From Macrostomum lignano (taxonomy: Eukaryota), in assembly GCA_002269645.1 (NCBI GenBank), contig NIVC01000215.1, positions 720,086-784,085 of the forward strand: DNA of 64,000 nucleotides, given 5' to 3'. The first letter of the stretch is position 1, and each line of letters opens with the position of its first letter. The notes below the pieces were generated by a model. That model was not told the DNA's origin, ran no database searches, and saw only the letters and a list, made by a program, of their open reading frames with translations. A program made the translations under genes and the position numbers. Below are positions 37,328 through 64,000 of this stretch, one piece after another.

Positions 37328-40300
37328 AATTTGCCTCTGCCGTATTTGTCTTGTCGATTATTTTCGAGGCCGCCACATTATTCGTCATAGTGCGCTAAAG
37401 ATTTTTTGATCAGCAAAGACTGCAGATAACTTAAACTTAGTATTCTTTCCAACTTCGCAATAGCATCCATGTACGTATTAATAGAAGGAAACAAGACCCC
37501 GTTACAAACCGCAGAAAATAAGTAATGAAATAATATTTTTTTAACAATTAAACTATCGTGAATATTAAAATTTGACATCATTTTTCAGACATTTGTTAAA
37601 ATCTGAACTAAATTTTGTGTCTTACGAAACAGTACTTTTCAGCGAAACCTGGAGAGACTGACTGACTGCGTCTGCGCATGATGGCGTTTTCAATATATTA
37701 TGCTATGGGCCTATGGTCTATTGATGTACATATACAGTATATACTTCTTGAAAAAACTACAGTATAGTATTATGACTACATTATTACACTGTTTCAGGCA
37801 TTCAGGCTATATTATAGGCTAAAAAATTATAATACTTTCATTAGTAATCTATAAAAGAATCTGTAAAGAATGTAAAGAATCTATACTGTGTTAAAAAAAT
37901 GCCAAGTCTGCTAAATGCCAACTCTGAAAATTTTGAGGGTCAGCAAGGATTAGCAATAGTAAGGTACAATAGAGTCAAGATATTTGTGTTTGCTTTGATT
38001 TTGAGTTTGATTAATGTTAGGCCCCTAATTAGCATCCTAGTTTTTTTATTTTGGGCATCCTAGGAATTCTGGAGCTTAGTCCTAAGATGCCAAATGCCAC
38101 AATGATCAGGGGTTGTATTTTGGATATTGTGGTAGGTCAATAGGTGTTTTTGTTCTTAATTATTCTATACCACTAAGGCCACCAAGTTGTAAGTAAGGCC
38201 TATCTATCTAGGTAGGTAGGTATGTGCTCAATTTTATCAAAATAGTCCTAAATTTAGGCTAACCCTAGATTGGAGTTGCCCAATGAGGCACATTTCTTAC
38301 TCTTGCTGTCTCCTAATAGTTATTACTTCTTTCTTCTATTAGCTTAAGCTTAGAAAATAGTAAGTCAGAATGCTTGCTTTATTTCTTAGACCAAATTGTA
38401 GTGATATAGCCAAATCTAAAATGAGGCAAAATTTGCTTGTATTTATAGCCTTATAGGGAGGTGGGGTGCATCAGTGCATAAAACAAGTATAGCAAAACAA
38501 AGTCATCAATTAAAAAAAAATTAGCAAAAATAGTTCTTGTCAAAATAATTCTCCTATTTATAACAAGTTTAGAATTAAGTTATATAGAATGGCAAAGTTT
38601 AGACTTTGTAGTCATAGATCTAGATATATATCCTAAACTTAAATATGCCCTAAAAAATCAAATTATTAGGCTCCCTAGTGTCATGGTGACCCATAATCAG
38701 GATCAAGATCATGACATGACATACCTATGCCAGAACAAATCCTATCAAAAAGTTGGATTGCACTATGCACCAGAATAAATCCTATCAAAAAAGTTTGCTT
38801 GCACCATGTACCACAACATTATAGAAAAAACTGCAAAAATCTATAATTTTCCATTTGAAAAATACTAGTAAAACTTGTATTTGAATCTGTTTCATAGAAA
38901 TGAAATGTTGATATAAATTAATAAAAAAAGCCATCAATACACTGGTAAACAAAAATTGCTAATAAAAAGAAATTATATATAATTTTCTGTTCGAGAAAAT
39001 ATTGTCTTGTCTGAAGTTTTTGTCTTGCAACAAGTTGTGCCAATTTTTTGTCTTATGTCATACTGCGCTAGACTTTTCTCCTTTGCCTGCTATTGCGCCA
39101 GAGTGCGTCAGTGCAGCGCACATCCAACCCCTTTTTGTTCTGGAATTTTCAATGAAAAAGGCAGTCTTCCTATCTATAGAATTAGTGTCTTGGTAAGGAA
39201 TGGTTATAAACTATAAAGGTCATATCCAATACTATAGAAGTAGCCTAAATTATATGAAAAAGAAAAATGTATCATTAAAATTGTATTTGAAAAATTAAAA
39301 TATCAAAAACTAAGTCAATATCCAGGGACCAAGGTCTAGATCATATAGTTCATAGTTCAGAACACTGTATGTATCCCAGAAAAAATATGACCAATTTTTG
39401 GTATATGCCAATTTATGCTAAACATATAGAATCTTATTGTAGCTAAAATGTCAATAGGGTGCCTGACCGTGCCTATATACTAACAAATAGAAAATTTCCC
39501 CAAAATGTACACTAAAATTTCTCTTAAAAAGAGGCTATTTATCTTTGACAATGAGTTTCCTAAGAAAGGTCATTTTTAAGATAGGGCCTATCAAAAATAT
39601 TAACAGTTTATTTTTTAGATTACTTTTAGAGGTAAAATAAAATCAGACCTTAGAAAATAATGATGCATAATTGTAGTAGTGCTTCAATACTGTACAAATT
39701 TTGAGCAATAAAGGTATGTTTTCTTAGAAACTAAACTTGTGCGAAATACTAGATAAATATTTTGTTTTACCATACCGAATATTTTTGTTTTACTGCGCGA
39801 AATAAATTGGGGAATTATTTTTTTGTTTTAATTGTATGCCCTATTGGAATAAGTTTTCAGACACTGTGGACAGTGCATCTAGTGCGCCATGGCAATCATA
39901 AAGTGGCCTGGACGGTGCGTCATGACAATCTTCAAATCCTAAGGTGGTATGGACGATGTGTCATTCAAATCTTCAAATCCTAGGGTGCCATAGCACTCTA
40001 GGTTTAGGTGATATTGTGCATGACTCCAGTCTCTATCATGTTCATTCTGATGATGCATCACTCGTTTTTGAGAGATTTAAAGAGATTGAGAGAAAGTTGT
40101 GTGTTTTACCGCACTTGTGTTTTACTGCACTCTGTTCTGTACTGTACTTCTGCCCCCTTCTGTTGTAGTTGTATCTATTTCTTAATTCTTAGTCTACTGT
40201 CTACTCGTCTTTTGACTTACAAAGTTACATTGTTGGTCTATTCAAAGAAAAATAAATAATGTAAATAGTGTGGCAATTGCATCAGTGAGTACTTAAAATA

Positions 40301-42544
40301 ATTACGAACACTGAAACCCTTTACTTCAATTTGGCTAATCGGTTAATACAAAATGAAGAAACTCCGTGATGAACAACACAGAGTTCACGAACAAACAAAA
40401 TTGTCTTTGCCTTATCCACACACTTTTTCAGTAGTAGTTGTAGCACTTTGGCTCGGGTCGGGTTATCAAATCTGATAACTATTTAGCATGGTGTTTCGAA
40501 GAATATTTTCACATTTAAATGTCAGCATAAATAAATGTACGCGCAACCAATCAAAAAGATAATTAAACAAAGCAGAAAATTTGTTGAGACTTTTAATAGA
40601 ATTTAGTTTACTTTTTTATTTCTTGCAACTGCGTTATAAGAGAACATTAAGAGCAATTAGCATTTGGCACTATGTTATAATGTTTATGAGGCAATAAAGA
40701 ACATTTCTGCTGCGATCTTTCAACTACAATTTCCAATTTTACGATTAACTTGCATGCATATTCTAGATGACACAGCAATCAATACATATGATAGGAGATA
40801 TGCTATACTATAGCCCATAGCAATATTATCAAAGTTATAGAAATTAGAAAAACAAGTTTTACTTACAGTTTGCTGAATTTCCACCGTGCTGCTGACTTTC
40901 TCCTGTGCATGCTTCTCATCCTTGTTCAGCAGCGCTGTATGTAGCGCGTGATGTCCTCCTTGCATCTTACCTGTGAGCTGCTGTGCGTCATGGCGCATGG
41001 CGCGCGTAGCGCGCCATGCGCCATGACTATGAGGAAAAAGAAAAAGTGCGCCGGACGCCGTCCGCGAAAATACCACTTATTCCAATAGGGATTGTATGGG
41101 GGGGGGGAAACCACTATATATAGGAGCGATTTTATAGCAAATAAACCAACTGTCTTTTACCCGTGAGCAAATAATTGCAAACAGAATAAGCAGTTCAATC
41201 TAAAACTATTTCAAAGTCTTCAAGCTAAATAGCGACTTATTCATTTGCAAAACCTGTGAAACGATTCCAAGAAATTTGCTAAGAGAAGGGAATTGGGACT
41301 AATTCTTGGAGATATACTAAGAGAGGCGCCGTGACCCTCTAGTCTTGGTAACACCCTATTAGGACTATACACTAATACATATACCAGTACTAGACCGCTC
41401 AGGCCATAAGCTACCAGAACGCTACCAGAAACGCTACTAAGAACGCTACCCAGAAATATTTAAATGAAATTCTAAGAAATAGTTAGGGAGTTAAAACAAG
41501 TATAATCAGGATAACTGTAGGAATAACACCAGTTACAACTTGGTGGCAGCTTGTAGGACATTTAATAAATACTAATAGTTAGAAGTTTAGAAAGACAGAG
41601 CCAGAAGGCCTGTCACATAATTTTAGTTTTCAATGATCATTTTTACTAATTTTATTAAATATTAGCTAATTGTAAAAGAACAAAAAAATTATCACTGATT
41701 GTTTAGAGTATATGAATCATTCTTTTCTTTATATAAAACTATTAATATTTATATTGTACATTTTATTTACATCAAAATTTATATGCACTCAACAATTTTT
41801 GTTTTTTGCATGTCAATATGTGTGTAGTGTATGCAACTTTGCAAGAGGTTATTTGTACATTATATTCAGATTATATGCCATTGGCCCTAGCAAAATAAAT
41901 AGTCACTTTGTATTAAAAATTGAAACTATCTATTAAATGTCTCAATTAATTTTTGCTATCTATTTTTTAGGTGTATTCAAGATGTTTAAGGTGTTTTTTT
42001 CATTTTAAGAATAAAAGTTTATTCATTATCATATCATTTTCATGATTTATGATAAGTTTGATCAATATTTACTAAATAATTAACAACTCTTAAATTGCAT
42101 TATGGTTTCAGCCTATTTTAATCTTTAGACAACTAAAATGAGCAAAAACTTCTCTAAATCAGATAAGAGTCTGCTTTGCAATACAATAGCCACTATTGCT
42201 ATCACAGCTAATAGTGATAGCTCTGTAAATAGCGGATGCAAAGTTTTGTCAAAGCATTTGCTTCCTCTAAAGCCATATGATTGGGTTGAACTTTATAAGG
42301 TAATAATTGATTACTGCTTTTAAGTCTTAGTAAAAAATTTAAGCACATTGATTCCAATTTTAAAATAAAGAACTTTCCATTGTAGACAAATCATAATGCT
42401 AATGAAGTCAATGCATTTACACTAACACTATCAACTAAAAAAGTTTTTGTAGACAACTTGTTGGAGTCAGTAAGTTTAAAATGTTGTATTAAAATGATTC
42501 TTGCATAAATAATTTAAATTAAAGAATGGGGATTTGATATTTGT

Positions 42545-43015
42545 TATACCTTGAAGGGGATTTAGAATCTCAATCATACCTTGAATGGGATAAGGATCTC
42601 AGTCATACCTTGGAGGGGATTTGAGATCTTAGACATACCTTGGAGGGGATTTAGGATCTTAGACATACCTTGGAGGGGATTTGGGATCTTAGACATACCT
42701 TGGAGGGGATTTGGGATCTTAGACATACCTTGGAGGGGATTTGGGATCTCAGTCATACCTGGAAAGGGATTTGGGATCTCAGTCATACCTGGAAAGGGAT
42801 TTGGGATTTCAGTCATACCTGGAAAGGGATTTGGGATCTCAGTAATACCTGGAAAGGGATTTGGGATCTCAGTCATACCTGGAAAGGGATTTGGGATCTC
42901 AGTCATACCTGGAAAGGGATTTGGGATTTCAGTCATACCTGGAAAGGGATTTGGGATCTCAGTCATACCTGGAAAGGGATTTGGGATCTCAGTCATACCT
43001 CGAAGGGGATTTAAT
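42545..43015. repeat. 30-bp minisatellite (CAGTCATACCTGGAAAGGGATTTGGGATCT)
   Basis: Tandem copies; 10-aa ORF period. Confidence 0.95.
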
Positions 43016-43138
43016 AACAATCTGTCATAACTAATCCCAGTCAATCAGCCATTCTCTCTCTCGCCCGAATAGACAACCAGATCCCTGTTGCGCAACCACC
43101 TGGCTAGCCAGTTCGGGCCACTGTCCAGCCTCCACTTG

Positions 43139-46100
43139 ATGAGGCGCAATCGCGGCGGTGGCAGCCGTCTAACCGGCAGCGCCATAGCTGAGTTTGCCTC
43201 GCCTCAGTCGGCCACCAGCTGCTTGGCAGCGGAGCCTCCCCAGCTGACCATTCACGGGTCGCCGTGCCCGCTACTCGACGAAGATCCCAGCGGCTGCGGC
43301 GACAGCGGGCGACCAAAGCGACGTCGATGTAATCTGCTGCGAGCGTCGCCTTTCTATGAAAAAGCTATCCGTGAAACTGATCCCAGCCCCATAAAATCTG
43401 TTGATCCTAACAATTTCTATGGCCAAGATGACGGAGAGGAGGCTGAGGACAAATTGGCAATTCATCAACGTCGAGCTGAACACGCCAATCAGTGCCTGCT
43501 GTTCAAACTTAATCCGATGGCTTTTAGAGCCATTTTGGAGCGACTGGATTTGAAAGATTGGTTTAGACTGTTGGTGAGAGACCTTGCTGTGCTTGTTTCA
43601 TAACCCTTAAATTAATTCTCAGGTGAGAATCTCCCCAGAATGTCTCTTAGGTGAGAATCTCCCCCCCCCAAGAATGACTCTCAGGTGAGAATCTCCCTCA
43701 GAATGACTCTCAGGTGAGAATCTCCCCAGAATGATTCTCAGGTGAGAATCTCCCCAGAATGATTCTCAGGTGAGAATCTCCCTCAGAATGATTCTCAGAT
43801 GAGAATCTCCCCAGAATGATTCTCAGGTGAGAATCTCCCCAGAATGTCTCTCAGGTGAGAATCTCCCCCCCCCCCAAGAATGACTCTCAGGTGAGAATCT
43901 CCCTCAGAATGATTCTCAGGTGAGAATCTCCCCAGAATGTCTCTTAGGTGAGAATCTCCCCCCCACAGAATGACTCTCTGGTGAGAATCTCCCCCCAGAA
44001 TGACTCTCAGGTGAGAATCTTCCTCAGAATGATTCTCAGGTGAGAATCTCCCCAGATGGTTCTCAGATGAGAATCTCCCCAGAATGATTCTCAGGTGAGA
44101 ATCTCCCCAGAATGTCTCTCAGGTGAGAATCTCCCCCCCCCAAGAATGACTCTCAGGTGAGAATCTCCCTCAGAATGATTCTCAGGTGAGAATCTCCCCA
44201 GAATGTCTCTTAGGTGAGAATCTCCCCCCCACAGAATGACTCTCTGGTGAGAATCTCCCCCCAGAATGACTCTCAGGTGAGAATCTCCCTCAGAATGATT
44301 CTCAGGTGAGAATCTCCCCAGATGGTTCTCAGATGAGAATCCCTCCACAGAATGATTCTCAAGTGAGAATCTCCTCCAGAATTATTATCAGGTCAAAGCA
44401 AAGCGCCCACAACCCCGTCGGTGTCCGCAGGAGGTGTGCAGCTGCACACATCACCGGGTACGCCTCGCGCTGACAGCTACCCGTCAGTTCCGACTGGATG
44501 GGTCGCTGTTCCGACGCGGTTTTCCAGTCCCTTCGCCGCCATTAAACGACAGCCTCTGTATGCGATTGCTGGGCCAATTATCCACAACGCTGACTTGCCT
44601 AACTGTCAATCTGGCGGATTACAGTCAGCGCAGCATTAGCGGCAAACTGCTGATTGACATTGCGCGACAATTCCCTGCTTTGGAGAGTCTGGAACTCGTG
44701 CCTGTACAGCTAAGCGCGGCCGACTGCCGATCAGCTGGTATTGCGGGGCTTCAGCGACTCGCTCGACTGCGCCTGCTGATGCCGCCGCCCGAGCAGAGGT
44801 TTGTCGCTAGCAGGGGAGCTTACGGTGGCCTTGGCTTCAGCAGCAGCTTCAGCAGCGGCTACGGCGACTGGACTGGGGACGAGTGTCGAATCACTGAGGA
44901 TGGCCTCTGGCACCTGCTGAAGGTGATGAATTGTTTGATGAGTTGATAACGGATTCTGGGTTTCGGTAGAGATGATGGATTCTGTGTTCTGGTAGAGACT
45001 AAGGATTCTGGGTTTCGGTAGAGATGATGGATTCTGGGTTCTGGTAGAGACTAAGGATTCTGGGTTTCGGTAGAGATGATGATGGATGCTGTGTTCCAGT
45101 AGAGATGATGATGGATGCTGGGTGTCAGTGGAGATAATGATGGATTCTGGGTGTCAGTGGAGATGATGATGGATGCTGGGTGTCAGTGGAGATGATGATG
45201 GATTCTGGGTGTCAGTAGAGATGATGATAGATGCTGGGTGTCAGTAGAGATGATGATGGATGCTGGGTGTCAGTAGAGATGATGATGGATGCTGGGTGTC
45301 AGTAGAGATGATGATGGATGCTGAGTGTCAGAACCTAAAGCCGCTCCCCACCGCACGCAGACCGTGGGTCCCAGACTGGAGGAGCTTCGCGTCCCGGCCG
45401 CCGGCCTCAGCGGCAAGTGCTTCCACTTCCTGACCGACCGCCTGACCATCCTGGAGCTGGTTGGTGTCGTCTCGCCGCGCGTACTTCGCCGATTGACCGA
45501 AGCCGCCTGCTGTCGGTCGCTTCGCTGCCTCCTGGTTGTCGCCGCTCCGCCAAGCCGAACTCCCGCTGGCTGTCGTCTTGCCGACTGGCTCGACTGGCAG
45601 CCAAGCGACCTCTACGCCCGATTGCCGCGTCTGTGCATCGCCGACTTTGCCGGCCGCGGCGTCAGCTGCTCGGCTCGTCACGTTGAGCTGCCGGTCGGAC
45701 AGGAGATCGGCTACTTCGGACGTCGGCACGGCGATTTGGGATCGGCAGATATTGGACAGGCCAGGCGTGGCGAGAGATGGCTGAGCGTGCTCACCGCGTT
45801 CACCTGCGTTTCCTGCCTGGTGCTCACGGATACGTCTGTGAGTTGGTTGATGGATGATGGGATTTTGGGATTGATGGATGATGGGATTTTGGGATTGATG
45901 GATGATGGGATTTTGGGATTGATGGATGATGGGATTTTGGGATTAACGGATGATGGGATTTTGGGATTGATGGATGATGGGATTTTGGAATTGATGGATG
46001 ATGGGATTTTGGGATTGATGGATGATGGGATTTTGGGATTGATGGATGATGGGATTTTGGGATTAACGGATGATGGGATTTTGGGATTGATGGATGATGG

Positions 46101-47554
46101 GATTTTGGGATTGATGGATGATGGGATTTTGGGATTGATGGATGATGGGATTTTGGGATCGACGGGTGATGGGATTTTGGGATTGATGGATGATGGGATT
46201 TTGGGATTGACAAATGATGGGATTTTGGGATTGATGGATGATGGGATTTTGGGATTGACGGATAATGGGATTTTGGGATTGACGGATGATGGGATTTTGG
46301 GATTGATGGATGATGGGATTTTGGGATTGACGGATGATGGGATTTTGGGATTAACGGATGATGGAATTTTGGGATTGACGGGTGATGGGATTTTGGGACT
46401 AACGGATGATGGGATTTTATGATTGTTGAATGATGGGTTTTGGGGATTTGAGGATAAAGATTGGAGATTTGGGTTGAGATCTTTAGACTGGGTTTAGTTG
46501 CATTGCATTGTGCATTGGGTGATGGCGTGTTAGGCTGTTGCATGTTTAAGTAAGTCGATGTGGGTTCTCTCGGATCGTGTCTAGAACATGCACTGCCCGC
46601 TACCCCTGGCCATGGCCAGGTGGACGACCAGTGTCTGCAGGCGGTGAGCCAGCGCCTGTCCAGCAGTCTGCAGGCCCTGTGCCTCACCCACTGCACCCGG
46701 ATCAGCGCCTCAGGCTTTTGCACGCTCGCCGAGTGCTCCAAATTGCGTCGGCTCCGAGTTTCCTGCACGCAGTTCGACCTCGGCGTTTCAACCCGTCTGC
46801 CTCCGCCGGGACTGCAGGAGCTGGCGGTGGCCTCCTGCCACCGGCTGGGCCAGCCTGTGCAGCCCGACGTGCTGCGACGCCTCCTGGCACTTCGCCAACT
46901 CGTCAGTCTCGACCTGTCCTTCTGCGTCGGACTGCCGACTGCCGACGAGATTGCCGATTGTCTTCGTCGGACCGACAGCGTCGCCGCCGCTGCTAAGCTA
47001 ACCATCTACTGTAGGGGTGTCAGCGTGCCGATTGCGCAGGTGAGTACGATGAAGCTTTGGCGTCTCAGCCTCGGCAATCCCATTTAACCCGTTAAAAACG
47101 TTACCGTGACAAGAATCTTGTGACTTCTCTTCAATTTCTTGACTAACTGACGATCTGAATGCGGTTATTCTTACTGTTAAAGAGTCATACCTTATGAAAC
47201 TTTCAGGAGCAACTGGACTCGATGAACCTAAATAGGCCAGTCGAGTTTAACAACCATCGATATCCATCGTCGTCATTGTCTTGTACTCAGCAGGACGGCT
47301 GGTCCAATAGCGACTGGACCGCAACAGCTGCCCAGTCGGTGCGGCCAATGTGCCTGCCGACACACTGGGTTCACCCCACTGCCACCGAAGCAGCTCGCCA
47401 GCAGGACCTGGAAGGCGGCTACGAGCACTATGTGGGCGAGTTTGACCTCATAGAGGACGAGCACGACTTCGATTTTGACGATACGGACGATGAAGATTAT
47501 ACAGACGAAGACTTAATCGACTGGGTTGACGACGGATCAGATTTTAGCTATTGA
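43139..47554 (+). CDS. F-box/leucine-rich repeat (FBXL-like) protein, ~723 aa, 5 exons, acidic C-tail
   Basis: Phase-0 GT-AG exons 43139-43573, 44431-44922, 45361-45837, 46620-47039, 47207-47554. F-box across the first junction: [25 protein letters not shown]|EVCS. AMN1-type LRRs: [18 protein letters not shown]...[22 protein letters not shown]. The true start may lie in an upstream exon. Confidence 0.8.
43616..44392. repeat. ~28-bp minisatellite (CTCAGGTGAGAATCTCCCCAGAATGATT) in F-box intron 1
   Basis: Tandem copies with variable C-run. Confidence 0.95.
44952..45325. repeat. ~29-bp minisatellite (GTAGAGATGATGATGGATGCTGGGTGTCA) in F-box intron 2
   Basis: Tandem copies. Confidence 0.9.
45848..46422. 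repeat. 24-bp minisatellite (GATGATGGGATTTTGGGATTGATG) in F-box intron 3, ~24 copies
   Basis: Tandem copies; 8-aa period DDGILGLM. Confidence 0.95.
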
Positions 47555-48058
47555 TGACAGAAGGCTGCGATGATGCTGACAGCATGCTCTGTGTTGCATT
47601 TTGCTCACCCTTTAAACCAGTTTAAATATACAAACGTTAGAAACTATTAACTACGAATAACAACACTAAAAAGCTGCACTTCAAAAGTTTTATAATAGTA
47701 CAGACCACTTGAACTTTATATGCTTCCCGATATATATTGTAAACGTCATTGATAAACGCTTAAAACAGATCCGATACCTTATGTTACTTTAGTATAGAGC
47801 ATAGCTGACAGGCTACGATTTACGTACTGTATAAAATGCGTCTGCGCTTTACAGTGCAGAGCTGTAGAGACTGCAGTTGTGTAGTATGTAACTGAGTATG
47901 ATGCAACATTGATTAGTAAACGGCCAGCACATGTAATTACAGTTCACTATAAGTTGCAGTTTGATCAGCAGGCATCCAGCAACTCGTACAGGTCGGTAGG
48001 AGCGCCGCGATCAAGCCAGCATACAGGTTGGTATAGCGCGATCCGCAACGCACATCGA

Positions 48059-48181
48059 TCACTTCTTCTTATGACCGCCCTTGGCAGCGGCCTGCTCGCC
48101 CTCGGCTTTTTCCGGCTGCTGCTTGGCGTCCTTGCTGGCATCGGCGGCCTTCTTGTCGGCGGCGGCTTTCTTGGCAGGCAT
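48059..48181 (-). CDS. Microprotein A, 40 aa: MPAKKAAADKKAADASKDAKQQPEKAEGEQAAAKGGHKKK (copy 1)
   Basis: ATG in AAACATG context with an in-frame TAA 18 nt upstream; GC3-rich codons (GCC, AAG, GAC, CAG); frame-preserving homology to microprotein B. Not in the ORF track (<60 aa). Confidence 0.8.
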   Translation of the reverse strand: MPAKKAAADKKAADASKDAKQQPEKAEGEQAAAKGGHKKK

Positions 48182-48905
48182 GTTTGTCTGTTGAGATTAG
48201 GAAGCTGATGCTTGGAGCTGCAATTTGAGAAGCGAGCAGCTGAGGTTTGCAACGTGACCAACGTCAACTTCAAGTATAGCTAGCTGGCTGTACATCCTCA
48301 TTAGAAAAACTATCTAGATATATTCTCACGGGCACTTCTTCTTCTTTAACCGCTTATTGGAGCAGTGCAGTTCTACAAGGACCATTGGTGCATATCTAGC
48401 CTCTAGTTGGATGTGCTGGACAACGAAATCTAGAGGATGCTATATCAAGCCAAATACAAGTAATGCCCCCTTTCTCTGTCTGCAACTGCTGATCTAACAC
48501 AAAACATGCTAAGCATATAGGGAAACAGAGAGCATTTAAAGAACGAGAGCCGAAAACACCTGCTTGCTTTAAAAATACTGTCCAATATGTAATTTGGAAA
48601 TGCTACTGTAATTATTCTACAATCAAACAACTTTTTTCAATGGATCAATTTACAACTATAAGCTTTCGTCAGCACGTGAGTAAGGTTAGTACAGTACAGA
48701 ATACAGTAAGTAACCTTGCAGTTTCAGAGCTGGGTGCTGCGACTCTTTAGCCCCAACAAAGACGATACGCTAATGCGGACAGATTATAGTATACTGTATG
48801 TACAGGTATAGAGATAGCTCAGAGTTCCACTCAGTCACGCCAATAGTAGGCCTGGCTGTCATGCGGTGCAGAGCACACCTAACAATTGATCTCTCTGAAA
48901 TCGCA

Positions 48906-49046
48906 TCACTTCTTCTGACCGGCCTTGGCGGCAGCGCCACCAGCCTGCTGTTGTTGTTGCTGCTGCTTTTGCTGCTTGGCGTCCTTGTTGGCATCGGCTG
49001 CCTGCTGCTTGCCGGCTCCCTGCTGCTGGTTCTGCTTGGCTGGCAT
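48906..49046 (-). CDS. Microprotein B, 46 aa: MPAKQNQQQGAGKQQAADANKDAKQQKQQQQQQQAGGAAAKAGQKK (copy 1)
   Basis: First ATG within the TTG-started 67-aa ORF; A at -3; paralogous to A at both ends and in the core. Confidence 0.8.
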   Translation of the reverse strand: MPAKQNQQQGAGKQQAADANKDAKQQKQQQQQQQAGGAAAKAGQKK

Positions 49047-49928
49047 TCTGTGTTTTGCTTTTTGTGCTTGAGAGCTGCTTAGAGCTGCAATCGGGGCGAC
49101 AGTAAGCAAGTCATATAGTGCTCACACAACAACACACACACAGCAGCGAACGAAGTCTGTGTGCATCTTAATCAAGTAGCTAGCTACAATTTTTAAGTGC
49201 TACCAACCAGAGTATAACTTAGCTAACTACCAAAGGAATTTCACTCTTTCTACTCATACAACTAATGATCGACGCTGGTTGCATTGATAAACCTGATAAA
49301 CCTGACCAGCTCGCAAGGGATGCCTAGAAATTATACATTTACGAGCCGTACACTCCATTTCCACAGATTAGAACACAAAAGCCCAGTAGCTAGTTATTGC
49401 ACTACAAAATGTCTAACTCTTATACATAAACTGAAACAGCCCCACTGTCAGCCTGTGAGCGAGAGGCCCCTAAGCCTTGAGGAGCATGAAACTATATACG
49501 TGACTAGGAAGCAGCAAAAATATTGGTAAAAGTAGAGCTCAAGCCGAAAAACGATTGTTGGTTGTTGCAACAACTTTGTAAGTAACTGATGCACCCAGTA
49601 CAACAATGTAATTTACGACAAGTACATGACTGCCCATCAGAACAGAGCAGCTGGTACCATAGTATAGAGCATGGCTGACAGGCTACGATTTACGTACTGT
49701 ATAAAATGCGTCTGCGCTTTACAGTGCAGAGCTGTAGAGACTGCAGTTGTGTAGTATGTAACTGAGTATGATGCAACATTGATTAGTAAACGGCCAGCAC
49801 ATGTAATTACAGTTCACTATAAGTTGCAGTTTGATCAGCAGGCATCCAGCAACTCGTACAGGTCGGTAGGAGCGCCGCGATCAAGCCAGCATACAGGTTG
49901 GTATAGCGCGATCCGCAACGCACATCGA

Positions 49929-50051
49929 TCACTTCTTCTTATGACCGCCCTTGGCAGCGGCCTGCTCGCCCTCGGCTTTTTCCGGCTGCTGCTTGGCGTC
50001 CTTGCTGGCATCGGCGGCCTTCTTGTCGGCGGCGGCTTTCTTGGCAGGCAT
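49929..50051 (-). CDS. Microprotein A copy 2
   Basis: Same ORF as copy 1. Confidence 0.8.
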   Translation of the reverse strand: MPAKKAAADKKAADASKDAKQQPEKAEGEQAAAKGGHKKK

Positions 50052-50780
50052 GTTTGTCTGTTGAGATTAGGAAGCTGATGCTTGGAGCTGCAATTTGAGA
50101 AGCGAGCAGCTGAGGTTTGCAACGTGACCAACGTCAACTTCAAGTATAGCTAGCTGGCTGTACATCCTCATTAGAAAAACTATCTAGATATATTCTCACG
50201 GGCACTTCTTCTTCTTTAACCGCTTATTGGAGCAGTGCAGCTCTACAAGGACCATTGGTGCATATCTAGCCTCTAGTTGGATGTGCTGGACAACGAAATC
50301 TAGAGGATGCTATATCAAGCCAAATACAAGTAATGCCCCCTTTCTCTGTCTGCAACTGCTGATCTAACACAAAACATGCTAAGCATATAGGGAAACAGAG
50401 AGCATTTAAAGAACGAGAGCCGAAAACACCTGCTTGCTTTAAAAATACTGTCCAATATGTAATTTGGAAATGCTACTGTAATTATTCTACAATCAAACAA
50501 CTTTTTTCAATGGATCAATTTACAACTATAAGCTTTCGTCAGCACGTGAGTAAGGTTAGTACAGTACAGAATACAGTAAGTAACCTTGCAGTTTCAGAGC
50601 TGGGTGCTGCGACTCTTTAGCCCCAACAAAGACGATACGCTAATGCGGACAGATTATAGTATACTGTATGTACAGGTATAGAGATAGCTCAGAGTTCCAC
50701 TCAGTCACGCCAATAGTAGGCCTGGCTGTCATGCGGTGCAGAGCACACCTAACAATTGATCTCTCTGAAATCGCATCGCA

Positions 50781-50921
50781 TCACTTCTTCTGACCGGCCT
50801 TGGCGGCAGCGCCACCAGCCTGCTGTTGTTGTTGCTGCTGCTTTTGCTGCTTGGCGTCCTTGTTGGCATCGGCTGCCTGCTGCTTGCCGGCTCCCTGCTG
50901 CTGGTTCTGCTTGGCTGGCAT
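50781..50921 (-). CDS. Microprotein B copy 2
   Basis: Same ORF as copy 1. Confidence 0.8.
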   Translation of the reverse strand: MPAKQNQQQGAGKQQAADANKDAKQQKQQQQQQQAGGAAAKAGQKK

Positions 50922-51805
50922 TCTGTGTTTTGCTTTTTGTGCTTGAGAGCTGCTTAGAGCTGCAATCGGGGCGACAGTAAGCAAGTCATATAGTGCTCAC
51001 ACAACAACACACACACACAGCAGCGAACGAAGTCTGTGTGCATCTTAATCAAGTAGCTAGCTACAATTTTTAAGTGCTACCAACCAGAGTATAACTTAGC
51101 TAACTACCAAAGGAATTTCACTCTTTCTACTCATACAACTAATGATCGACGCTGGTTGCATTGATAAACCTGATAAACCTGACCAGCTCGCAAGGGATGC
51201 CTAGAAATTATACATTTACGAGCCGTACACTCCATTTCCACAGATTAGAACACAAAAGCCCAGTAGCTAGTTATTGCACTACAAAATGTCTAACTCTTAT
51301 ACATAAACTGAAACAGCCCCACTGTCAGCCTGTGAGCGAGAGGCCCCTAAGCCTTGAGGAGCATGAAACTATATACGTGACTAGGAAGCAGCAAAAATAT
51401 TGGTAAAAGTAGAGCTCAAGCCGAAAAACGATTGTTGGTTGTTGCAACAACTTTGTAAGTAACTGATGCACCCAGTACAACAATGTAATTTACGACAAGT
51501 ACATGACTGCCCATCAGAACAGAGCAGCTGGTACCATAGTATAGAGCATGGCTGACAGGCTACGATTTACGTACTGTATAAAATGCGTCTGCGCTTTACA
51601 GTGCAGAGCTGTAGAGACTGCAGTTGTGTAGTATGTAACTGAGTATGATGCAACATTGATTAGTAAACGGCCAGCACATGTAATTACAGTTCACTATAAG
51701 TTGCAGTTTGATCAGCAGGCATCCAGCAACTCGTACAGGTCGGTAGGAGCGCCGCGATCAAGCCAGCATACAGGTTGGTATAGCGCGATCCGCAACGCAC
51801 ATCGA

Positions 51806-51928
51806 TCACTTCTTCTTATGACCGCCCTTGGCAGCGGCCTGCTCGCCCTCGGCTTTTTCCGGCTGCTGCTTGGCGTCCTTGCTGGCATCGGCGGCCTTCT
51901 TGTCGGCGGCGGCTTTCTTGGCAGGCAT
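51806..51928 (-). CDS. Microprotein A copy 3
   Basis: Same ORF as copy 1. Confidence 0.8.
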   Translation of the reverse strand: MPAKKAAADKKAADASKDAKQQPEKAEGEQAAAKGGHKKK

Positions 51929-52657
51929 GTTTGTCTGTTGAGATTAGGAAGCTGATGCTTGGAGCTGCAATTTGAGAAGCGAGCAGCTGAGGTTTGCAAC
52001 GTGACCAACGTCAACTTCAAGTATAGCTAGCTGGCTGTACATCCTCATTAGAAAAACTATCTAGATATATTCTCACGGGCACTTCTTCTTCTTTAACCGC
52101 TTATTGGAGCAGTGCAGCTCTACAAGGACCATTGGTGCATATCTAGCCTCTAGTTGGATGTGCTGGACAACGAAATCTAGAGGATGCTATATCAAGCCAA
52201 ATACAAGTAATGCCCCCTTTCTCTGTCTGCAACTGCTGATCTAACACAAAACATGCTAAGCATATAGGGAAACAGAGAGCATTTAAAGAACGAGAGCCGA
52301 AAACACCTGCTTGCTTTAAAAATACTGTCCAATATGTAATTTGGAAATGCTACTGTAATTATTCTACAATCAAACAACTTTTTTCAATGGATCAATTTAC
52401 AACTATAAGCTTTCGTCAGCACGTGAGTAAGGTTAGTACAGTACAGAATACAGTAAGTAACCTTGCAGTTTCAGAGCTGGGTGCTGCGACTCTTTAGCCC
52501 CAACAAAGACGATACGCTAATGCGGACAGATTATAGTATACTGTATGTACAGGTATAGAGATAGCTCAGAGTTCCACTCAGTCACGCCAATAGTAGGCCT
52601 GGCTGTCATGCGGTGCAGAGCACACCTAACAATTGATCTCTCTGAAATCGCATCGCA

Positions 52658-52798
52658 TCACTTCTTCTGACCGGCCTTGGCGGCAGCGCCACCAGCCTGC
52701 TGTTGTTGTTGCTGCTGCTTTTGCTGCTTGGCGTCCTTGTTGGCATCGGCTGCCTGCTGCTTGCCGGCTCCCTGCTGCTGGTTCTGCTTGGCTGGCAT
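52658..52798 (-). CDS. Microprotein B copy 3
   Basis: Same ORF as copy 1. Confidence 0.8.
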   Translation of the reverse strand: MPAKQNQQQGAGKQQAADANKDAKQQKQQQQQQQAGGAAAKAGQKK

Positions 52799-53682
52799 TC
52801 TGTGTTTTGCTTTTTGTGCTTGAGAGCTGCTTAGAGCTGCAATCGGGGCGACAGTAAGCAAGTCATATAGTGCTCACACAACAACACACACACACAGCAG
52901 CGAACGAAGTCTGTGTGCATCTTAATCAAGTAGCTAGCTACAATTTTTAAGTGCTACCAACCAGAGTATAACTTAGCTAACTACCAAAGGAATTTCACTC
53001 TTTCTACTCATACAACTAATGATCGACGCTGGTTGCATTGATAAACCTGATAAACCTGACCAGCTCGCAAGGGATGCCTAGAAATTATACATTTACGAGC
53101 CGTACACTCCATTTCCACAGATTAGAACACAAAAGCCCAGTAGCTAGTTATTGCACTACAAAATGTCTAACTCTTATACATAAACTGAAACAGCCCCACT
53201 GTCAGCCTGTGAGCGAGAGGCCCCTAAGCCTTGAGGAGCATGAAACTATATACGTGACTAGGAAGCAGCAAAAATATTGGTAAAAGTAGAGCTCAAGCCG
53301 AAAAACGATTGTTGGTTGTTGCAACAACTTTGTAAGTAACTGATGCACCCAGTACAACAATGTAATTTACGACAAGTACATGACTGCCCATCAGAACAGA
53401 GCAGCTGGTACCATAGTATAGAGCATGGCTGACAGGCTACGATTTACGTACTGTATAAAATGCGTCTGCGCTTTACAGTGCAGAGCTGTAGAGACTGCAG
53501 TTGTGTAGTATGTAACTGAGTATGATGCAACATTGATTAGTAAACGGCCAGCACATGTAATTACAGTTCACTATAAGTTGCAGTTTGATCAGCAGGCATC
53601 CAGCAACTCGTACAGGTCGGTAGGAGCGCCGCGATCAAGCCAGCATACAGGTTGGTATAGCGCGATCCGCAACGCACATCGA

Positions 53683-53805
53683 TCACTTCTTCTTATGACC
53701 GCCCTTGGCAGCGGCCTGCTCGCCCTCGGCTTTTTCCGGCTGCTGCTTGGCGTCCTTGCTGGCATCGGCGGCCTTCTTGTCGGCGGCGGCTTTCTTGGCA
53801 GGCAT
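53683..53805 (-). CDS. Microprotein A copy 4
   Basis: Same ORF as copy 1. Confidence 0.8.
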   Translation of the reverse strand: MPAKKAAADKKAADASKDAKQQPEKAEGEQAAAKGGHKKK

Positions 53806-54534
53806 GTTTGTCTGTTGAGATTAGGAAGCTGATGCTTGGAGCTGCAATTTGAGAAGCGAGCAGCTGAGGTTTGCAACGTGACCAACGTCAACTTCAAGTA
53901 TAGCTAGCTGGCTGTACATCCTCATTAGAAAAACTATCTAGATATATTCTCACGGGCACTTCTTCTTCTTTAACCGCTTATTGGAGCAGTGCAGCTCTAC
54001 AAGGACCATTGGTGCATATCTAGCCTCTAGTTGGATGTGCTGGACAACGAAATCTAGAGGATGCTATATCAAGCCAAATACAAGTAATGCCCCCTTTCTC
54101 TGTCTGCAACTGCTGATCTAACACAAAACATGCTAAGCATATAGGGAAACAGAGAGCATTTAAAGAACGAGAGCCGAAAACACCTGCTTGCTTTAAAAAT
54201 ACTGTCCAATATGTAATTTGGAAATGCTACTGTAATTATTCTACAATCAAACAACTTTTTTCAATGGATCAATTTACAACTATAAGCTTTCGTCAGCACG
54301 TGAGTAAGGTTAGTACAGTACAGAATACAGTAAGTAACCTTGCAGTTTCAGAGCTGGGTGCTGCGACTCTTTAGCCCCAACAAAGACGATACGCTAATGC
54401 GGACAGATTATAGTATACTGTATGTACAGGTATAGAGATAGCTCAGAGTTCCACTCAGTCACGCCAATAGTAGGCCTGGCTGTCATGCGGTGCAGAGCAC
54501 ACCTAACAATTGATCTCTCTGAAATCGCATCGCA

Positions 54535-54675
54535 TCACTTCTTCTGACCGGCCTTGGCGGCAGCGCCACCAGCCTGCTGTTGTTGTTGCTGCTGCTTTTG
54601 CTGCTTGGCGTCCTTGTTGGCATCGGCTGCCTGCTGCTTGCCGGCTCCCTGCTGCTGGTTCTGCTTGGCTGGCAT
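54535..54675 (-). CDS. Microprotein B copy 4
   Basis: Same ORF as copy 1. Confidence 0.8.
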   Translation of the reverse strand: MPAKQNQQQGAGKQQAADANKDAKQQKQQQQQQQAGGAAAKAGQKK

Positions 54676-55557
54676 TCTGTGTTTTGCTTTTTGTGCTTGA
54701 GAGCTGCTTAGAGCTGCAATCGGGGCGACAGTAAGCAAGTCATATAGTGCTCACACAACAACACACACACAGCAGCGAACGAAGTCTGTGTGCATCTTAA
54801 TCAAGTAGCTAGCTACAATTTTTAAGTGCTACCAACCAGAGTATAACTTAGCTAACTACCAAAGGAATTTCACTCTTTCTACTCATACAACTAATGATCG
54901 ACGCTGGTTGCATTGATAAACCTGATAAACCTGACCAGCTCGCAAGGGATGCCTAGAAATTATACATTTACGAGCCGTACACTCCATTTCCACAGATTAG
55001 AACACAAAAGCCCAGTAGCTAGTTATTGCACTACAAAATGTCTAACTCTTATACATAAACTGAAACAGCCCCACTGTCAGCCTGTGAGCGAGAGGCCCCT
55101 AAGCCTTGAGGAGCATGAAACTATATACGTGACTAGGAAGCAGCAAAAATATTGGTAAAAGTAGAGCTCAAGCCGAAAAACGATTGTTGGTTGTTGCAAC
55201 AACTTTGTAAGTAACTGATGCACCCAGTACAACAATGTAATTTACGACAAGTACATGACTGCCCATCAGAACAGAGCAGCTGGTACCATAGTATAGAGCA
55301 TGGCTGACAGGCTACGATTTACGTACTGTATAAAATGCGTCTGCGCTTTACAGTGCAGAGCTGTAGAGACTGCAGTTGTGTAGTATGTAACTGAGTATGA
55401 TGCAACATTGATTAGTAAACGGCCAGCACATGTAATTACAGTTCACTATAAGTTGCAGTTTGATCAGCAGGCATCCAGCAACTCGTACAGGTCGGTAGGA
55501 GCGCCGCGATCAAGCCAGCATACAGGTTGGTATAGCGCGATCCGCAACGCACATCGA

Positions 55558-55680
55558 TCACTTCTTCTTATGACCGCCCTTGGCAGCGGCCTGCTCGCCC
55601 TCGGCTTTTTCCGGCTGCTGCTTGGCGTCCTTGCTGGCATCGGCGGCCTTCTTGTCGGCGGCGGCTTTCTTGGCAGGCAT
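55558..55680 (-). CDS. Microprotein A copy 5
   Basis: Same ORF as copy 1. Confidence 0.8.
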   Translation of the reverse strand: MPAKKAAADKKAADASKDAKQQPEKAEGEQAAAKGGHKKK

Positions 55681-56409
55681 GTTTGTCTGTTGAGATTAGG
55701 AAGCTGATGCTTGGAGCTGCAATTTGAGAAGCGAGCAGCTGAGGTTTGCAACGTGACCAACGTCAACTTCAAGTATAGCTAGCTGGCTGTACATCCTCAT
55801 TAGAAAAACTATCTAGATATATTCTCACGGGCACTTCTTCTTCTTTAACCGCTTATTGGAGCAGTGCAGCTCTACAAGGACCATTGGTGCATATCTAGCC
55901 TCTAGTTGGATGTGCTGGACAACGAAATCTAGAGGATGCTATATCAAGCCAAATACAAGTAATGCCCCCTTTCTCTGTCTGCAACTGCTGATCTAACACA
56001 AAACATGCTAAGCATATAGGGAAACAGAGAGCATTTAAAGAACGAGAGCCGAAAACACCTGCTTGCTTTAAAAATACTGTCCAATATGTAATTTGGAAAT
56101 GCTACTGTAATTATTCTACAATCAAACAACTTTTTTCAATGGATCAATTTACAACTATAAGCTTTCGTCAGCACGTGAGTAAGGTTAGTACAGTACAGAA
56201 TACAGTAAGTAACCTTGCAGTTTCAGAGCTGGGTGCTGCGACTCTTTAGCCCCAACAAAGACGATACGCTAATGCGGACAGATTATAGTATACTGTATGT
56301 ACAGGTATAGAGATAGCTCAGAGTTCCACTCAGTCACGCCAATAGTAGGCCTGGCTGTCATGCGGTGCAGAGCACACCTAACAATTGATCTCTCTGAAAT
56401 CGCATCGCA

Positions 56410-56550
56410 TCACTTCTTCTGACCGGCCTTGGCGGCAGCGCCACCAGCCTGCTGTTGTTGTTGCTGCTGCTTTTGCTGCTTGGCGTCCTTGTTGGCATCG
56501 GCTGCCTGCTGCTTGCCGGCTCCCTGCTGCTGGTTCTGCTTGGCTGGCAT
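56410..56550 (-). CDS. Microprotein B copy 5
   Basis: Same ORF as copy 1. Confidence 0.8.
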   Translation of the reverse strand: MPAKQNQQQGAGKQQAADANKDAKQQKQQQQQQQAGGAAAKAGQKK

Positions 56551-57432
56551 TCTGTGTTTTGCTTTTTGTGCTTGAGAGCTGCTTAGAGCTGCAATCGGGG
56601 CGACAGTAAGCAAGTCATATAGTGCTCACACAACAACACACACACAGCAGCGAACGAAGTCTGTGTGCATCTTAATCAAGTAGCTAGCTACAATTTTTAA
56701 GTGCTACCAACCAGAGTATAACTTAGCTAACTACCAAAGGAATTTCACTCTTTCTACTCATACAACTAATGATCGACGCTGGTTGCATTGATAAACCTGA
56801 TAAACCTGACCAGCTCGCAAGGGATGCCTAGAAATTATACATTTACGAGCCGTACACTCCATTTCCACAGATTAGAACACAAAAGCCCAGTAGCTAGTTA
56901 TTGCACTACAAAATGTCTAACTCTTATACATAAACTGAAACAGCCCCACTGTCAGCCTGTGAGCGAGAGGCCCCTAAGCCTTGAGGAGCATGAAACTATA
57001 TACGTGACTAGGAAGCAGCAAAAATATTGGTAAAAGTAGAGCTCAAGCCGAAAAACGATTGTTGGTTGTTGCAACAACTTTGTAAGTAACTGATGCACCC
57101 AGTACAACAATGTAATTTACGACAAGTACATGACTGCCCATCAGAACAGAGCAGCTGGTACCATAGTATAGAGCATGGCTGACAGGCTACGATTTACGTA
57201 CTGTATAAAATGCGTCTGCGCTTTACAGTGCAGAGCTGTAGAGACTGCAGTTGTGTAGTATGTAACTGAGTATGATGCAACATTGATTAGTAAACGGCCA
57301 GCACATGTAATTACAGTTCACTATAAGTTGCAGTTTGATCAGCAGGCATCCAGCAACTCGTACAGGTCGGTAGGAGCGCCGCGATCAAGCCAGCATACAG
57401 GTTGGTATAGCGCGATCCGCAACGCACATCGA

Positions 57433-57555
57433 TCACTTCTTCTTATGACCGCCCTTGGCAGCGGCCTGCTCGCCCTCGGCTTTTTCCGGCTGCTGCTTGG
57501 CGTCCTTGCTGGCATCGGCGGCCTTCTTGTCGGCGGCGGCTTTCTTGGCAGGCAT
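57433..57555 (-). CDS. Microprotein A copy 6
   Basis: Same ORF as copy 1. Confidence 0.8.
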   Translation of the reverse strand: MPAKKAAADKKAADASKDAKQQPEKAEGEQAAAKGGHKKK

Positions 57556-63909: not shown

Positions 63910-64000
63910 TCACTTCTTCTGACCGGCCTTGGCGGCAGCGCCACCAGCCTGCTGTTGTTGTTGCTGCTGCTTTTGCTGCTTGGCGTCCTTGTTGGCATCG
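63910..64000 (-). CDS. Microprotein B copy 9 (3' part; start lies beyond the window)
   Basis: Same sequence as the C-terminal part of copy 1. Confidence 0.75.
   Translation of the reverse strand, partial: DANKDAKQQKQQQQQQQAGGAAAKAGQKK

What the first reader, a model, noticed from the sequence alone, without database searches (positions are those of the whole stretch)
48059..49046. A and B are diverged paralogues showing coding-type conservation
Seen: both start MPAK, share AADA(S/N)KDAKQQ (GCCGATGCCAGCAAGGACGCCAAGCAGCAG vs GCCGATGCCAACAAGGACGCCAAGCAGCAA) and end AAAK(G/A)G(H/Q)KK(K)-TGA. Differences include synonymous changes and frame-preserving length changes, while most flanking DNA does not align. 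Inference: an old duplication under purifying selection, then specialisation (A Lys/Glu-rich, B poly-Gln), then amplification of the pair. This is the best sequence-only evidence that these tiny ORFs are real.
Basis: partly seen in the sequence, partly recalled or inferred. Interest (0 to 1): 0.75.

Follow-up and report, generated by a model that had tools for sequence, protein, structure and literature searches.

The report
Amplified flatworm micro-protein gene pair

Summary
ORF A (48059..48181, minus) and ORF B (48906..49046, minus) share MPAK, AADA(S/N)KDAKQQ and AAAK.G.KK-TGA. Their DNA similarity is far above chance.

The window is Macrostomum lignano. The A+B pair forms a 1870-1877-bp unit repeated at least 9 times, with units about 99.9% identical.

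A/B homology covers about 190 nt. It starts at ATTGCAG|CTCYAAGCA, which matches the published M. lignano spliced-leader acceptor motif [T/C]TNCAG, and it ends a few bases after the stop codon. The flanks show no similarity.

The "coding-type" substitution test is suggestive but fragile. dN/dS is 0.35 (p=0.02) on the protein-guided alignment and 0.60 (p=0.29) on the DNA-guided one. Open frames are trivial here because the sense strand is only 5-6% T. The indels lie in CAG/CAA-repeat-like sequence.

Better support for coding:
- The homology block runs from the acceptor to the stop codon.
- The ATG and TGA are conserved.
- Codon usage matches a bona fide gene in the window.
- GenBank gene calls exist on this strand, and the one for B starts 2 nt after the acceptor.

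No homologues were found. A TMA7 gene lies about 2.3 kb upstream, but A and B are not detectably TMA7. The function is unknown and only inferred from composition. Verdict: a real orphan micro-protein gene pair of modest interest.

The parts
48059..48181 (-). ORF A, copy 1 (40 aa plus TGA). Identical copies lie at 49929..50051, 51806..51928, 53683..53805, 55558..55680, 57433..57555, 59308..59430, 61185..61307 and 63060..63182.
   Evidence: GC3 is 0.78 and the codon choice (GCC, AAG, CAG, GAC) matches the PKA-R gene in the window.
48182..48217 (-). A leader: 36 nt between the acceptor and the ATG, with no other ATG. Only its first 9-10 nt (CTCCAAGCA) are conserved with B.
48218..48223 (-). TTGCAG splice acceptor in front of A. 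A/B homology starts one base upstream of it (ATTGCAG).
   Evidence: The motif [T/C]TNCAG at M. lignano SL trans-splice junctions is reported in PMC8629364.
48906..49046 (-). ORF B, copy 1 (46 aa plus TGA). Identical copies lie at 50781..50921, 52658..52798, 54535..54675, 56410..56550, 58285..58425, 60160..60300 and 62037..62177.
   Evidence: GC3 is 0.72. A gene call on the NCBI M. lignano assembly covers the same ORF in L001, L002 and L004.
49047..49084 (-). B leader: 38 nt between the acceptor and the ATG, with no other ATG.
49085..49090 (-). TTGCAG splice acceptor in front of B.
   Evidence: In L001 and L002 the 58-aa, 5'-partial gene call for B starts at the first in-frame codon 2 nt after this AG.
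47790..64000 (-). Tandem array of A+B units (1870-1877 bp, at least 8.6 units). Its 3' edge is at 47790, 269 nt after the last A stop. It runs off the window at 64000.
   Evidence: The same array is found in M. lignano contigs NIVC01004846.1 and NIVC01001226.1.

Best explanation
A and B are two paralogous, lineage-specific (orphan) micro-protein genes of the free-living flatworm Macrostomum lignano.

Each gene is a single short exon. The exon begins at a TTGCAG acceptor of the type used for spliced-leader (SL) trans-splicing in this species. It carries a 36-38-nt leader and a 40- or 46-codon ORF, and its conservation ends at the stop codon.

The A+B pair is the unit of a head-to-tail array with at least 9 copies here. 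The copies are kept nearly identical, and all genes face the same way with spacers of about 0.69 and 0.84 kb. The array is therefore probably transcribed on the minus strand as long precursors that are resolved at the acceptors, giving a high dose of both mRNAs.

The products are very hydrophilic, basic peptides with no hydrophobic core:
- A is rich in Lys, Ala and Glu/Asp (pI 9.8).
- B is rich in Gln, Ala and Lys (pI 10.2).
- They have no signal peptide, no Cys and no aromatic residues.
They would therefore be cytosolic or nuclear, and either disordered or a lone helix. They would act in bulk (stoichiometrically), most plausibly by binding nucleic acid or ribosomes, or as hydrophilin-like protectants.

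What is shown: the paralogy, the amplification, the acceptor motif at the start of the homology, the codon usage, and the existence of gene calls on this strand.
What is inferred: SL addition, polycistronic transcription and translation.
What is a guess from composition alone: the biochemical role.
For: Organism: the only database relative of A (P0001, E=4e-6) is PAA46468.1, 'hypothetical protein BOX15_Mlig029044g1 [Macrostomum lignano]'. It is a frameshifted copy of A in the same array, and the assembly's identity is confirmed.

Paralogy.

Conservation is confined to the stretch from the acceptor to the stop, and the flanks are random.

Acceptor: TTGCAG matches [T/C]TNCAG, the top motif exactly at M. 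lignano SL junctions (PMC8629364).

Transcript start: on two contigs the gene call for B is 5'-partial. It starts at a non-start codon (CTA) 2 nt after the acceptor AG. This is what an ORF caller gives for a transcript that begins at the acceptor.

Transcription along the array: a 124-aa multi-exon gene model on the same strand spans 2.5 units and ends exactly at a B stop codon.

ORF bounds: the ATG and TGA sit at aligned positions, and the ATG is the first ATG in each exon.

Codon usage: GC3 is 0.72-0.78, against 0.82 in the PKA-R gene of the window. The same codons are preferred. The spacer DNA mostly runs 0.33-0.52 GC per 60-nt block (range 0.27-0.58).

dN/dS: the sense frame has the lowest value of the six frames, 0.35.

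Operon criteria: spacers of 693 and 844 nt are below the 1-kb criterion used for M. lignano operons.

Not a structured RNA: fold z-scores are 0.06 and +1.65, and Rfam gives no match.

Physico-chemistry. AlphaFold on the single sequence gives a helix at residues 3-33 with pLDDT 73.
Against: The substitution test is not robust. dN/dS is 0.60 with p=0.29 on the alternative alignment, and the synonymous count is not above the permutation null (P=0.45).

ORF openness and frame-preserving indels are expected from the T-poor, trinucleotide-like composition alone.

No orthologue or other relative was found. Conservation across species is therefore untested. A 40-aa query could not detect orthologues at about 60% identity in a library of 1.8 billion proteins.

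No AATAAA or ATTAAA occurs anywhere in the unit, although the neighbouring TMA7 gene has AATAAA shortly after its stop.

No RNA-seq, ribosome-profiling or peptide data could be examined here. The gene ID was not found in any searched paper or supplement.

The exact 40-aa and 46-aa products are not in the protein collections.
Confidence: 0.65

Rival explanations
1. The 1.9-kb repeat is a non-coding tandem repeat, or a source of non-coding transcripts. A and B are chance ORFs in a GC-rich, T-poor, low-complexity segment that is conserved for an RNA- or DNA-level reason, or kept similar by local gene conversion.
For: - ORF openness is trivial: 93% of composition-preserving permutations stay open.
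- The dN/dS result depends on the alignment.
- The synonymous count is not enriched.
- The unit has no canonical poly(A) signal.
- No homologues were found.
- The genome is extremely rich in tandem repeats.
Against: - Conservation starts at a splice acceptor and stops within about 5 nt of the shared stop codon.
- The ATG and TGA are aligned.
- Third-position GC and codon choice match a real gene of the window.
- There is no unusual RNA structure and no Rfam match.
- Gene calls exist on this strand in GenBank.
Confidence: 0.2
2. The functional reading frame is the codon-aligned antisense (plus-strand) one. It gives Leu/Gly-rich hydrophobic peptides, for example 47909..48208 and 48798..49082.
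For: Both antisense frames are open for more than 90 codons, and they share LGVL(A/V)GIG(G/C)LL.
Against: - Their openness follows automatically from a sense peptide that lacks Leu(TTA/CTA) and Ser(TCA) codons.
- dN/dS in that frame is 0.81.
- The start and stop are not at homologous positions. The ATG in A's antisense is the complement of a His codon, which is CAG in B.
- The GenBank calls are on the other strand.
Confidence: 0.03
3. A and B are highly diverged duplicates of the neighbouring TMA7 gene (translation machinery-associated protein 7) and keep a TMA7-like, ribosome-associated role.
For: - A TMA7 gene (PF09072 family) lies about 2.3 kb upstream of the array's 5' edge, on the same strand, in NIVC01001226.1.
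- The three proteins are similar in size class, composition, pI (9.8-10.2) and GRAVY.
- All three ORFs end in AAGAAGTGAT.
- There is a weak local DNA match between TMA7 and A (P about 0.01, uncorrected).
Against: - BLASTP gives E=1.6 and E=19.
- The profile-profile probability is 1.2%.
- Pfam gives no hit even at E<=10.
- The invariant TMA7 motifs GGKKKPLK and GP are absent.
- The DNA match needs frame-breaking gaps, and B shows none (P=0.17).
Confidence: 0.07
4. A and B are not complete genes but terminal exons of longer spliced coding sequences that run across repeat units.
For: - The B frame stays open upstream through the acceptor (67-codon ORF).
- GenBank holds a 124-aa multi-exon model that ends at a B stop.
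- GTGAG donors lie 41 and 112 nt upstream of the two acceptors.
Against: - Homology between A and B starts at the acceptor, and the shared ATG is the first ATG of each exon.
- For A, the frame upstream of the ATG is closed.
- The 124-aa model lies in a repeat at a contig end, where transcript assemblers commonly chain units. Its exon structure could not be reconstructed uniquely.
Confidence: 0.05

Closest known systems
SL trans-spliced genes and operons of Macrostomum lignano (Wudarski et al. 2017, PMC5730564; PMC8629364)
   Same: - The acceptor is [T/C]TNCAG at the first base of the exon.
- The genes have the same orientation.
- The spacers are under 1 kb.
- The gene call begins at the acceptor.
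   Different: Here the 'operon' would be a tandem array of two alternating micro-genes repeated at least 9 times. Described operons hold 2-9 different genes. SL-containing reads were not examined.
TMA7 (PF09072), translation machinery-associated protein 7
   Same: It is a small (64 aa), Lys/Ala/Gly-rich basic protein that ends in ...GKK. It is the physical neighbour on the same strand in the M. lignano assembly.
   Different: There is no detectable sequence or profile similarity. The invariant GGKKKPLK and GP motifs are missing. A and B are shorter and are tandemly amplified.
Hydrophilins and small disordered 'protectant' proteins (definition recalled from Garay-Arroyo et al. 2000: Gly >6% and high hydrophilicity; also Hero-type proteins)
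   Same: Gly is 7.5% in A and 10.9% in B. GRAVY is -1.48 and -1.81. There is no hydrophobic core, and high gene dosage is implied.
   Different: This is a physico-chemical class, not a homologous family. No stress-linked expression is known for A or B, and there is no LEA or other Pfam match.
Tandemly arrayed genes for small abundant basic proteins (histone clusters, protamine-like sperm proteins)
   Same: Head-to-tail amplification of short genes for Lys/Ala-rich basic proteins, with concerted evolution of the units.
   Different: A and B have no histone fold or H1 globular domain. They lack Arg (none in either), contain acidic residues (A) or poly-Gln (B), and have no Pfam match.

Membership tests
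Protein-coding paralogues under purifying selection | An excess of synonymous over non-synonymous change (dN/dS significantly below 1) in the proposed frame, and better there than in other frames | tested here: inconclusive
   dN/dS is 0.35 (p=0.019) and the lowest of six frames on the protein-guided alignment. It is 0.60 (p=0.29) on the DNA-guided alignment. Permutation gives P=0.04 for amino-acid identity and P=0.45 for the synonymous count.
Protein-coding paralogues under purifying selection | Homologous start and stop codons, with conservation bounded by the ORF | tested here: met
   The ATG and TGA are aligned. Similarity ends about 5 nt after the stop, and upstream only the acceptor core is conserved.
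Protein-coding paralogues under purifying selection | Host-like codon usage | tested here: met
   GC3 is 0.78 and 0.72, against 0.82 in the PKA-R gene. GCC, AAG, CAG, GAC and GGC are preferred in both.
M. lignano SL trans-spliced gene | [quoted passage not shown] | tested here: met
   TTGCAG lies at 48218..48223 and 49085..49090. The B gene call starts 2 nt after the AG on two contigs.
M. lignano SL trans-spliced gene | RNA-seq reads that carry the 35-nt SL joined at that site | not testable with these tools
   No read data are available here. The gene ID was not found in any searched paper or supplement.
M. lignano operon (criterion of PMC8629364) | Adjacent genes in the same orientation that are less than 1 kb apart | tested here: met
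   All copies are on the minus strand, with spacers of 693 and 844 nt.
TMA7 (PF09072) | A match to the family profile, and the invariant GGKKKPLK...GP motifs | tested here: not met
   Pfam gives no hit at E<=10. hhalign probability is 1.2%. BLASTP gives E=1.6 and E=19. The motifs are absent.
Hydrophilin (physico-chemical class) | Gly above 6% and a high mean hydrophilicity | tested here: met
   Gly is 3/40 in A and 5/46 in B. GRAVY is -1.48 and -1.81. The definition is taken from memory.
Hydrophilin (physico-chemical class) | Accumulation under water-deficit or stress conditions | not testable with these tools
   No expression data could be reached.
Structured non-coding RNA | A fold more stable than shuffles, or an Rfam match | tested here: not met
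   Fold z-scores are 0.06 and +1.65. There are 0 Rfam matches at gathering score and no tRNA.

The most novel reading that the evidence does not exclude
A and B are flatworm-specific, very abundant ribosome- or nucleic-acid-associated micro-proteins. They would have arisen beside TMA7, possibly from it and now diverged beyond recognition. Their amplification into a trans-spliced array would supply a bulk translation-linked or protective factor. The true 40-aa and 46-aa products are absent from current protein databases.
Probability: 0.1. Interest if true: 0.6.

Novelty: new member of a known kind. Interest (0 to 1): 0.35.

Why it matters
Micro-proteins under 50 aa are routinely missed by annotation. 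In GenBank these loci appear only in distorted forms: a 71-aa frameshift artefact, a 58-aa 5'-partial call and a 124-aa chained model. The likely real 40-aa and 46-aa products are in no database searched.

If the genes are confirmed, M. lignano would have a highly amplified, probably highly expressed pair of orphan basic peptides next to TMA7. That makes them candidates for abundant, lineage-specific cell components. M. lignano has transgenesis and RNAi, so this can be tested.

The case also carries a methodological caution. In T-poor, trinucleotide-like sequence, open frames, frame-preserving indels and a two-sequence dN/dS are weak evidence for coding. Exon bounds and codon usage were more informative here.

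Tried and rejected
Homologue searches all came back empty or uninformative:
- Pfam at E<=10 found nothing.
- The word-index searches with A and with B found nothing.
- The exhaustive HMMER search with A found only P0001, a copy from the same array.
- PDB searches with A and with the A+B profile gave only a chance hit at E=4.3.

Exact look-ups of the 40-aa, 46-aa and 67-aa forms found nothing on record.

A literature and supplement search for Mlig029044, PAA46468 and A0A267DB07 found nothing.

TMA7 descent was rejected.

The shared upstream motif AGCTAGCTA..CTTGA is not above chance (P=0.28).

The antisense hydrophobic ORFs were rejected.

A structured RNA was rejected.

Variation between units is too low to test constraint: 1 event in coding sequence against about 12 outside it across 13 units. 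Against the second contig there is 1 non-synonymous and 1 synonymous difference.

No extra diverged copies exist elsewhere in the window.

The attempt to reconstruct the exons of the 124-aa gene model gave 20 equally possible solutions and was abandoned.

The SL RNA gene is not in the window.

Full report
**What is there.** On the minus strand, 48059..48181 encodes MPAKKAAADKKAADASKDAKQQPEKAEGEQAAAKGGHKKK (A, 40 aa). Also on the minus strand, 48906..49046 encodes MPAKQNQQQGAGKQQAADANKDAKQQKQQQQQQQAGGAAAKAGQKK (B, 46 aa). The two loci are homologous well beyond chance. blastn gives E=8e-15. The local alignment score is 79, against 18.9 +/- 3.1 for shuffles. The A+B pair is the unit of a tandem array with units of 1870-1877 bp. 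The window holds 9 A and 8 B copies, all with identical coding DNA. The array runs from 47790 to the window end.

**Whose DNA it is.** An exhaustive HMMER search with A found a single protein, P0001 (E=4.4e-6). It is PAA46468.1, 'hypothetical protein BOX15_Mlig029044g1 [Macrostomum lignano]', on contig NIVC01004846.1 of GCA_002269645.1. That accession is the Mlig_3_7 assembly of the free-living flatworm M. lignano. The contig carries the same array at about 99.9% identity. P0001 is a copy of A with a 1-bp deletion and a mutated acceptor. It lies about 440 nt from a contig end, so it is either an assembly artefact or a degenerate edge copy. A second contig, NIVC01001226.1, holds the 5' edge of the array. 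The window is otherwise typical of this repeat-rich genome. It has dozens of minisatellites and an intronless PKA regulatory-subunit gene at 19362..20543.

**Anatomy of the homology.** A/B similarity is limited to about 190 nt.
- It begins 43 nt (A) or 45 nt (B) upstream of the ATG, at ATTGCAG|CTCYAAGCA.
- It ends about 5 nt after the shared TGA.
- The 400 nt further upstream and the 400 nt further downstream are no more alike than shuffles (P=0.28 and 0.77).
- Within the leader only the 16-nt core around the AG is clearly conserved. The remaining leader gives P=0.15.
- TTGCAG fits [T/C]TNCAG. That is the motif reported exactly at exon/outron junctions of SL trans-spliced genes in M. lignano, where about 30-39% of genes are trans-spliced and many lie in operons (PMC8629364 and PMC5730564).
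- On two contigs the gene call for B is a 58-aa, 5'-partial CDS. Its first codon (CTA) lies 2 nt after the acceptor AG (L001 1406, AG at 1402-1403; L002 3001). An ORF caller produces this when the transcript model begins at the acceptor, which is how the published TBONE pipeline cuts transcripts at SL sites.

I infer that both genes are single exons headed by an SL acceptor. This rests on motif and annotation coordinates, not on reads. The spacers (693 and 844 nt) and the uniform orientation satisfy the published operon criterion.

**Is the conservation 'coding-type'?** Only weakly.
- With the protein-guided alignment there are 11 synonymous and 21 non-synonymous differences. dS is 0.76, dN is 0.27 and dN/dS is 0.35, the lowest of the six frames. 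Fisher p=0.019.
- With the DNA-guided alignment, dN/dS is 0.60 and p=0.29.
- A permutation that keeps composition and the substitution spectrum gives P=0.04 for the number of identical residues and P=0.45 for synonymous codon differences.
- Differences by codon position are 11/7/14.
- The 0.12 value inside the three conserved blocks is circular, because the blocks were chosen by amino-acid identity.
- The sense strand has 5-6% T, so stop codons are rare in every frame. 93% of null sequences stay open.
- The length differences (12, 9 and 3 nt) lie in CAG/CAA/AAG-like repeats, where slippage keeps the frame regardless of selection.

**Evidence that does favour real genes.**
1. The homology block runs from a splice acceptor to a shared stop.
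2. The shared ATG is the first ATG of each exon.
3. GC3 (0.78 and 0.72) and the preferred codons (GCC, AAG, CAG, GAC, GGC) match the PKA-R gene (GC3 0.82). The spacer DNA mostly runs 0.33-0.52 GC per 60-nt block, with a range of 0.27-0.58.
4. GenBank gene calls lie on this strand. One is a 124-aa multi-exon model that spans 2.5 units and ends exactly at a B stop. This indicates transcript models along the array on this strand.
5. The exons show no unusual RNA structure (z=0.06 and +1.65), and there is no Rfam or tRNA match.
6. The antisense codon-aligned ORFs (Leu/Gly-rich) are a by-product of the sense composition. They have dN/dS 0.81 and non-homologous starts and stops.

**Evidence against, and gaps.**
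- No relative exists outside this array in Pfam, PDB or the large protein libraries. A 40-aa query cannot reach orthologues at moderate identity in 1.8 billion sequences, and such short ORFs are rarely called, so this absence says little.
- The unit has no AATAAA or ATTAAA, whereas the neighbouring TMA7 gene has AATAAA soon after its stop.
- Units are too alike to test constraint within the array.
- I could not reach any expression or peptide data.

**The neighbour.** In NIVC01001226.1 the array starts (with B first) about 1.9 kb after a gene on the same strand. That gene encodes [64 protein letters not shown]. This is a clear TMA7 (PF09072), with 239 relatives at E<=0.001. TMA7 resembles A and B in size class, composition and pI, and in the ...AAGAAGTGAT ending. 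Homology is nevertheless not detectable:
- BLASTP gives E=1.6 and E=19.
- hhalign gives a probability of 1.2%.
- The invariant TMA7 motifs are absent.
- The one weak DNA match (P about 0.01) needs frame-breaking gaps.

I do not file A and B under TMA7. The adjacency is recorded as a lead.

**How it most likely works.**
- Shown: an old duplication produced A and B. The pair was then amplified or homogenised as a unit. Each copy keeps an SL-type acceptor, a short leader and an intact ORF with host-like codons.
- Inferred: minus-strand transcription through the array, resolution by SL trans-splicing at each TTGCAG, and translation from the first genomic ATG. The SL's own terminal AUG would open only a 2-codon (B) or 7-codon (A) upstream ORF that ends in TAA before the main ATG. 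I read this from the SL sequence and the leaders.
- Guessed from composition: the products are 4.1-kDa and 4.8-kDa peptides that are basic (pI 9.8 and 10.2) and extremely hydrophilic. They have no hydrophobic core, Cys, aromatic residues or signal peptide. AlphaFold on the single sequence gives one helix at moderate confidence. Such peptides act by mass, so the amplification fits a demand for dosage. The two readings I consider most plausible are a nucleic-acid- or ribosome-associated role and a hydrophilin-like protective role. Neither was tested.

**Verdict.** My best reading is a real, orphan micro-protein gene pair in an SL-acceptor-headed tandem array (confidence about 0.65 for 'transcribed and coding', and low for any specific function). 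It is a new member of a known kind and of modest interest.

Noticed in passing
L002 523..717 (= L004 7523..7717; NIVC01001226.1), about 2.3 kb upstream of the first B exon, same strand: A TMA7 (PF09072) gene sits immediately upstream of the 5' edge of the A/B array. It is similar to A and B in composition and ends in the same AAGAAGTGAT, but shows no detectable homology to them.
   Followed up: yes
L001 442..657, and L004 16517 onward: The only GenBank protein for A (PAA46468.1, 71 aa) is a frameshifted copy that also has its acceptor mutated (TTGCTG). A second frameshifted A lies near the end of the other contig. Both sit at contig ends, so assembly error is as likely as real decay.
   Followed up: partly
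L004 13042..17653: A 124-aa multi-exon gene model spans about 2.5 repeat units on the A/B strand and ends exactly at a B stop codon. Its exon structure could not be reconstructed uniquely (20 candidate solutions).
   Followed up: partly
L002 3902 (= L004 10902): One A copy carries D14Y (GAT>TAT) inside the most conserved A/B motif (AADASKDAKQQ). One B copy carries a synonymous GCA>GCT change.
   Followed up: partly
window 47790..64000, any unit (for example 48182..50051): The 1.9-kb unit contains no AATAAA or ATTAAA on the coding strand, so the poly(A) signals of A and B are unknown. A 5-nt GATGC duplication directly after the B stop, and a TG dinucleotide in a (TG)n tract, vary between units.
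   Followed up: partly
array edges: window 47790 (unit position 392) and L002 2629 (unit position about 601): Unit positions 393-600 occur only at internal unit junctions and are absent at both outer edges of the array. The first duplication junction therefore seems to include about 200 nt not found in either flank.
   Followed up: no
window 47909..48208 (+) and 48798..49082 (+), and their copies: Long antisense ORFs encoding Leu/Gly-rich hydrophobic peptides overlap A and B in the codon-aligned frame. They are explained by the sense composition (AAG>CTT, GCC>GGC, CAG>CTG).
   Followed up: yes
window 5355..46448: More than 20 minisatellite arrays are present (periods 12-91 bp, up to about 2 kb each, plus an (ATAG)n of 1.5 kb at 23919..25389). 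They create many long spurious ORFs.
   Followed up: no
window 19362..20543 (+): An uninterrupted 393-codon ORF for a cAMP-dependent protein kinase regulatory subunit (RIIa plus two cNMP-binding domains). I used it as the codon-usage yardstick.
   Followed up: partly
window 43088..47554 (+): A run of plus-strand ORFs, some leucine-rich-repeat-like by eye and with no Pfam hit. It ends in an acidic C-terminus (47222..47554) and converges on the 3' edge of the array. It is probably the exons of one gene interrupted by minisatellites.
   Followed up: no
L002 2155..2370: A 71-codon hydrophilic Lys/Ser/Thr/Ala-rich ORF (ending ...KPAARKRRH) lies between TMA7 and the array. It has only a weak, low-complexity resemblance to A (E=0.017 in a tiny search space).
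   Followed up: no
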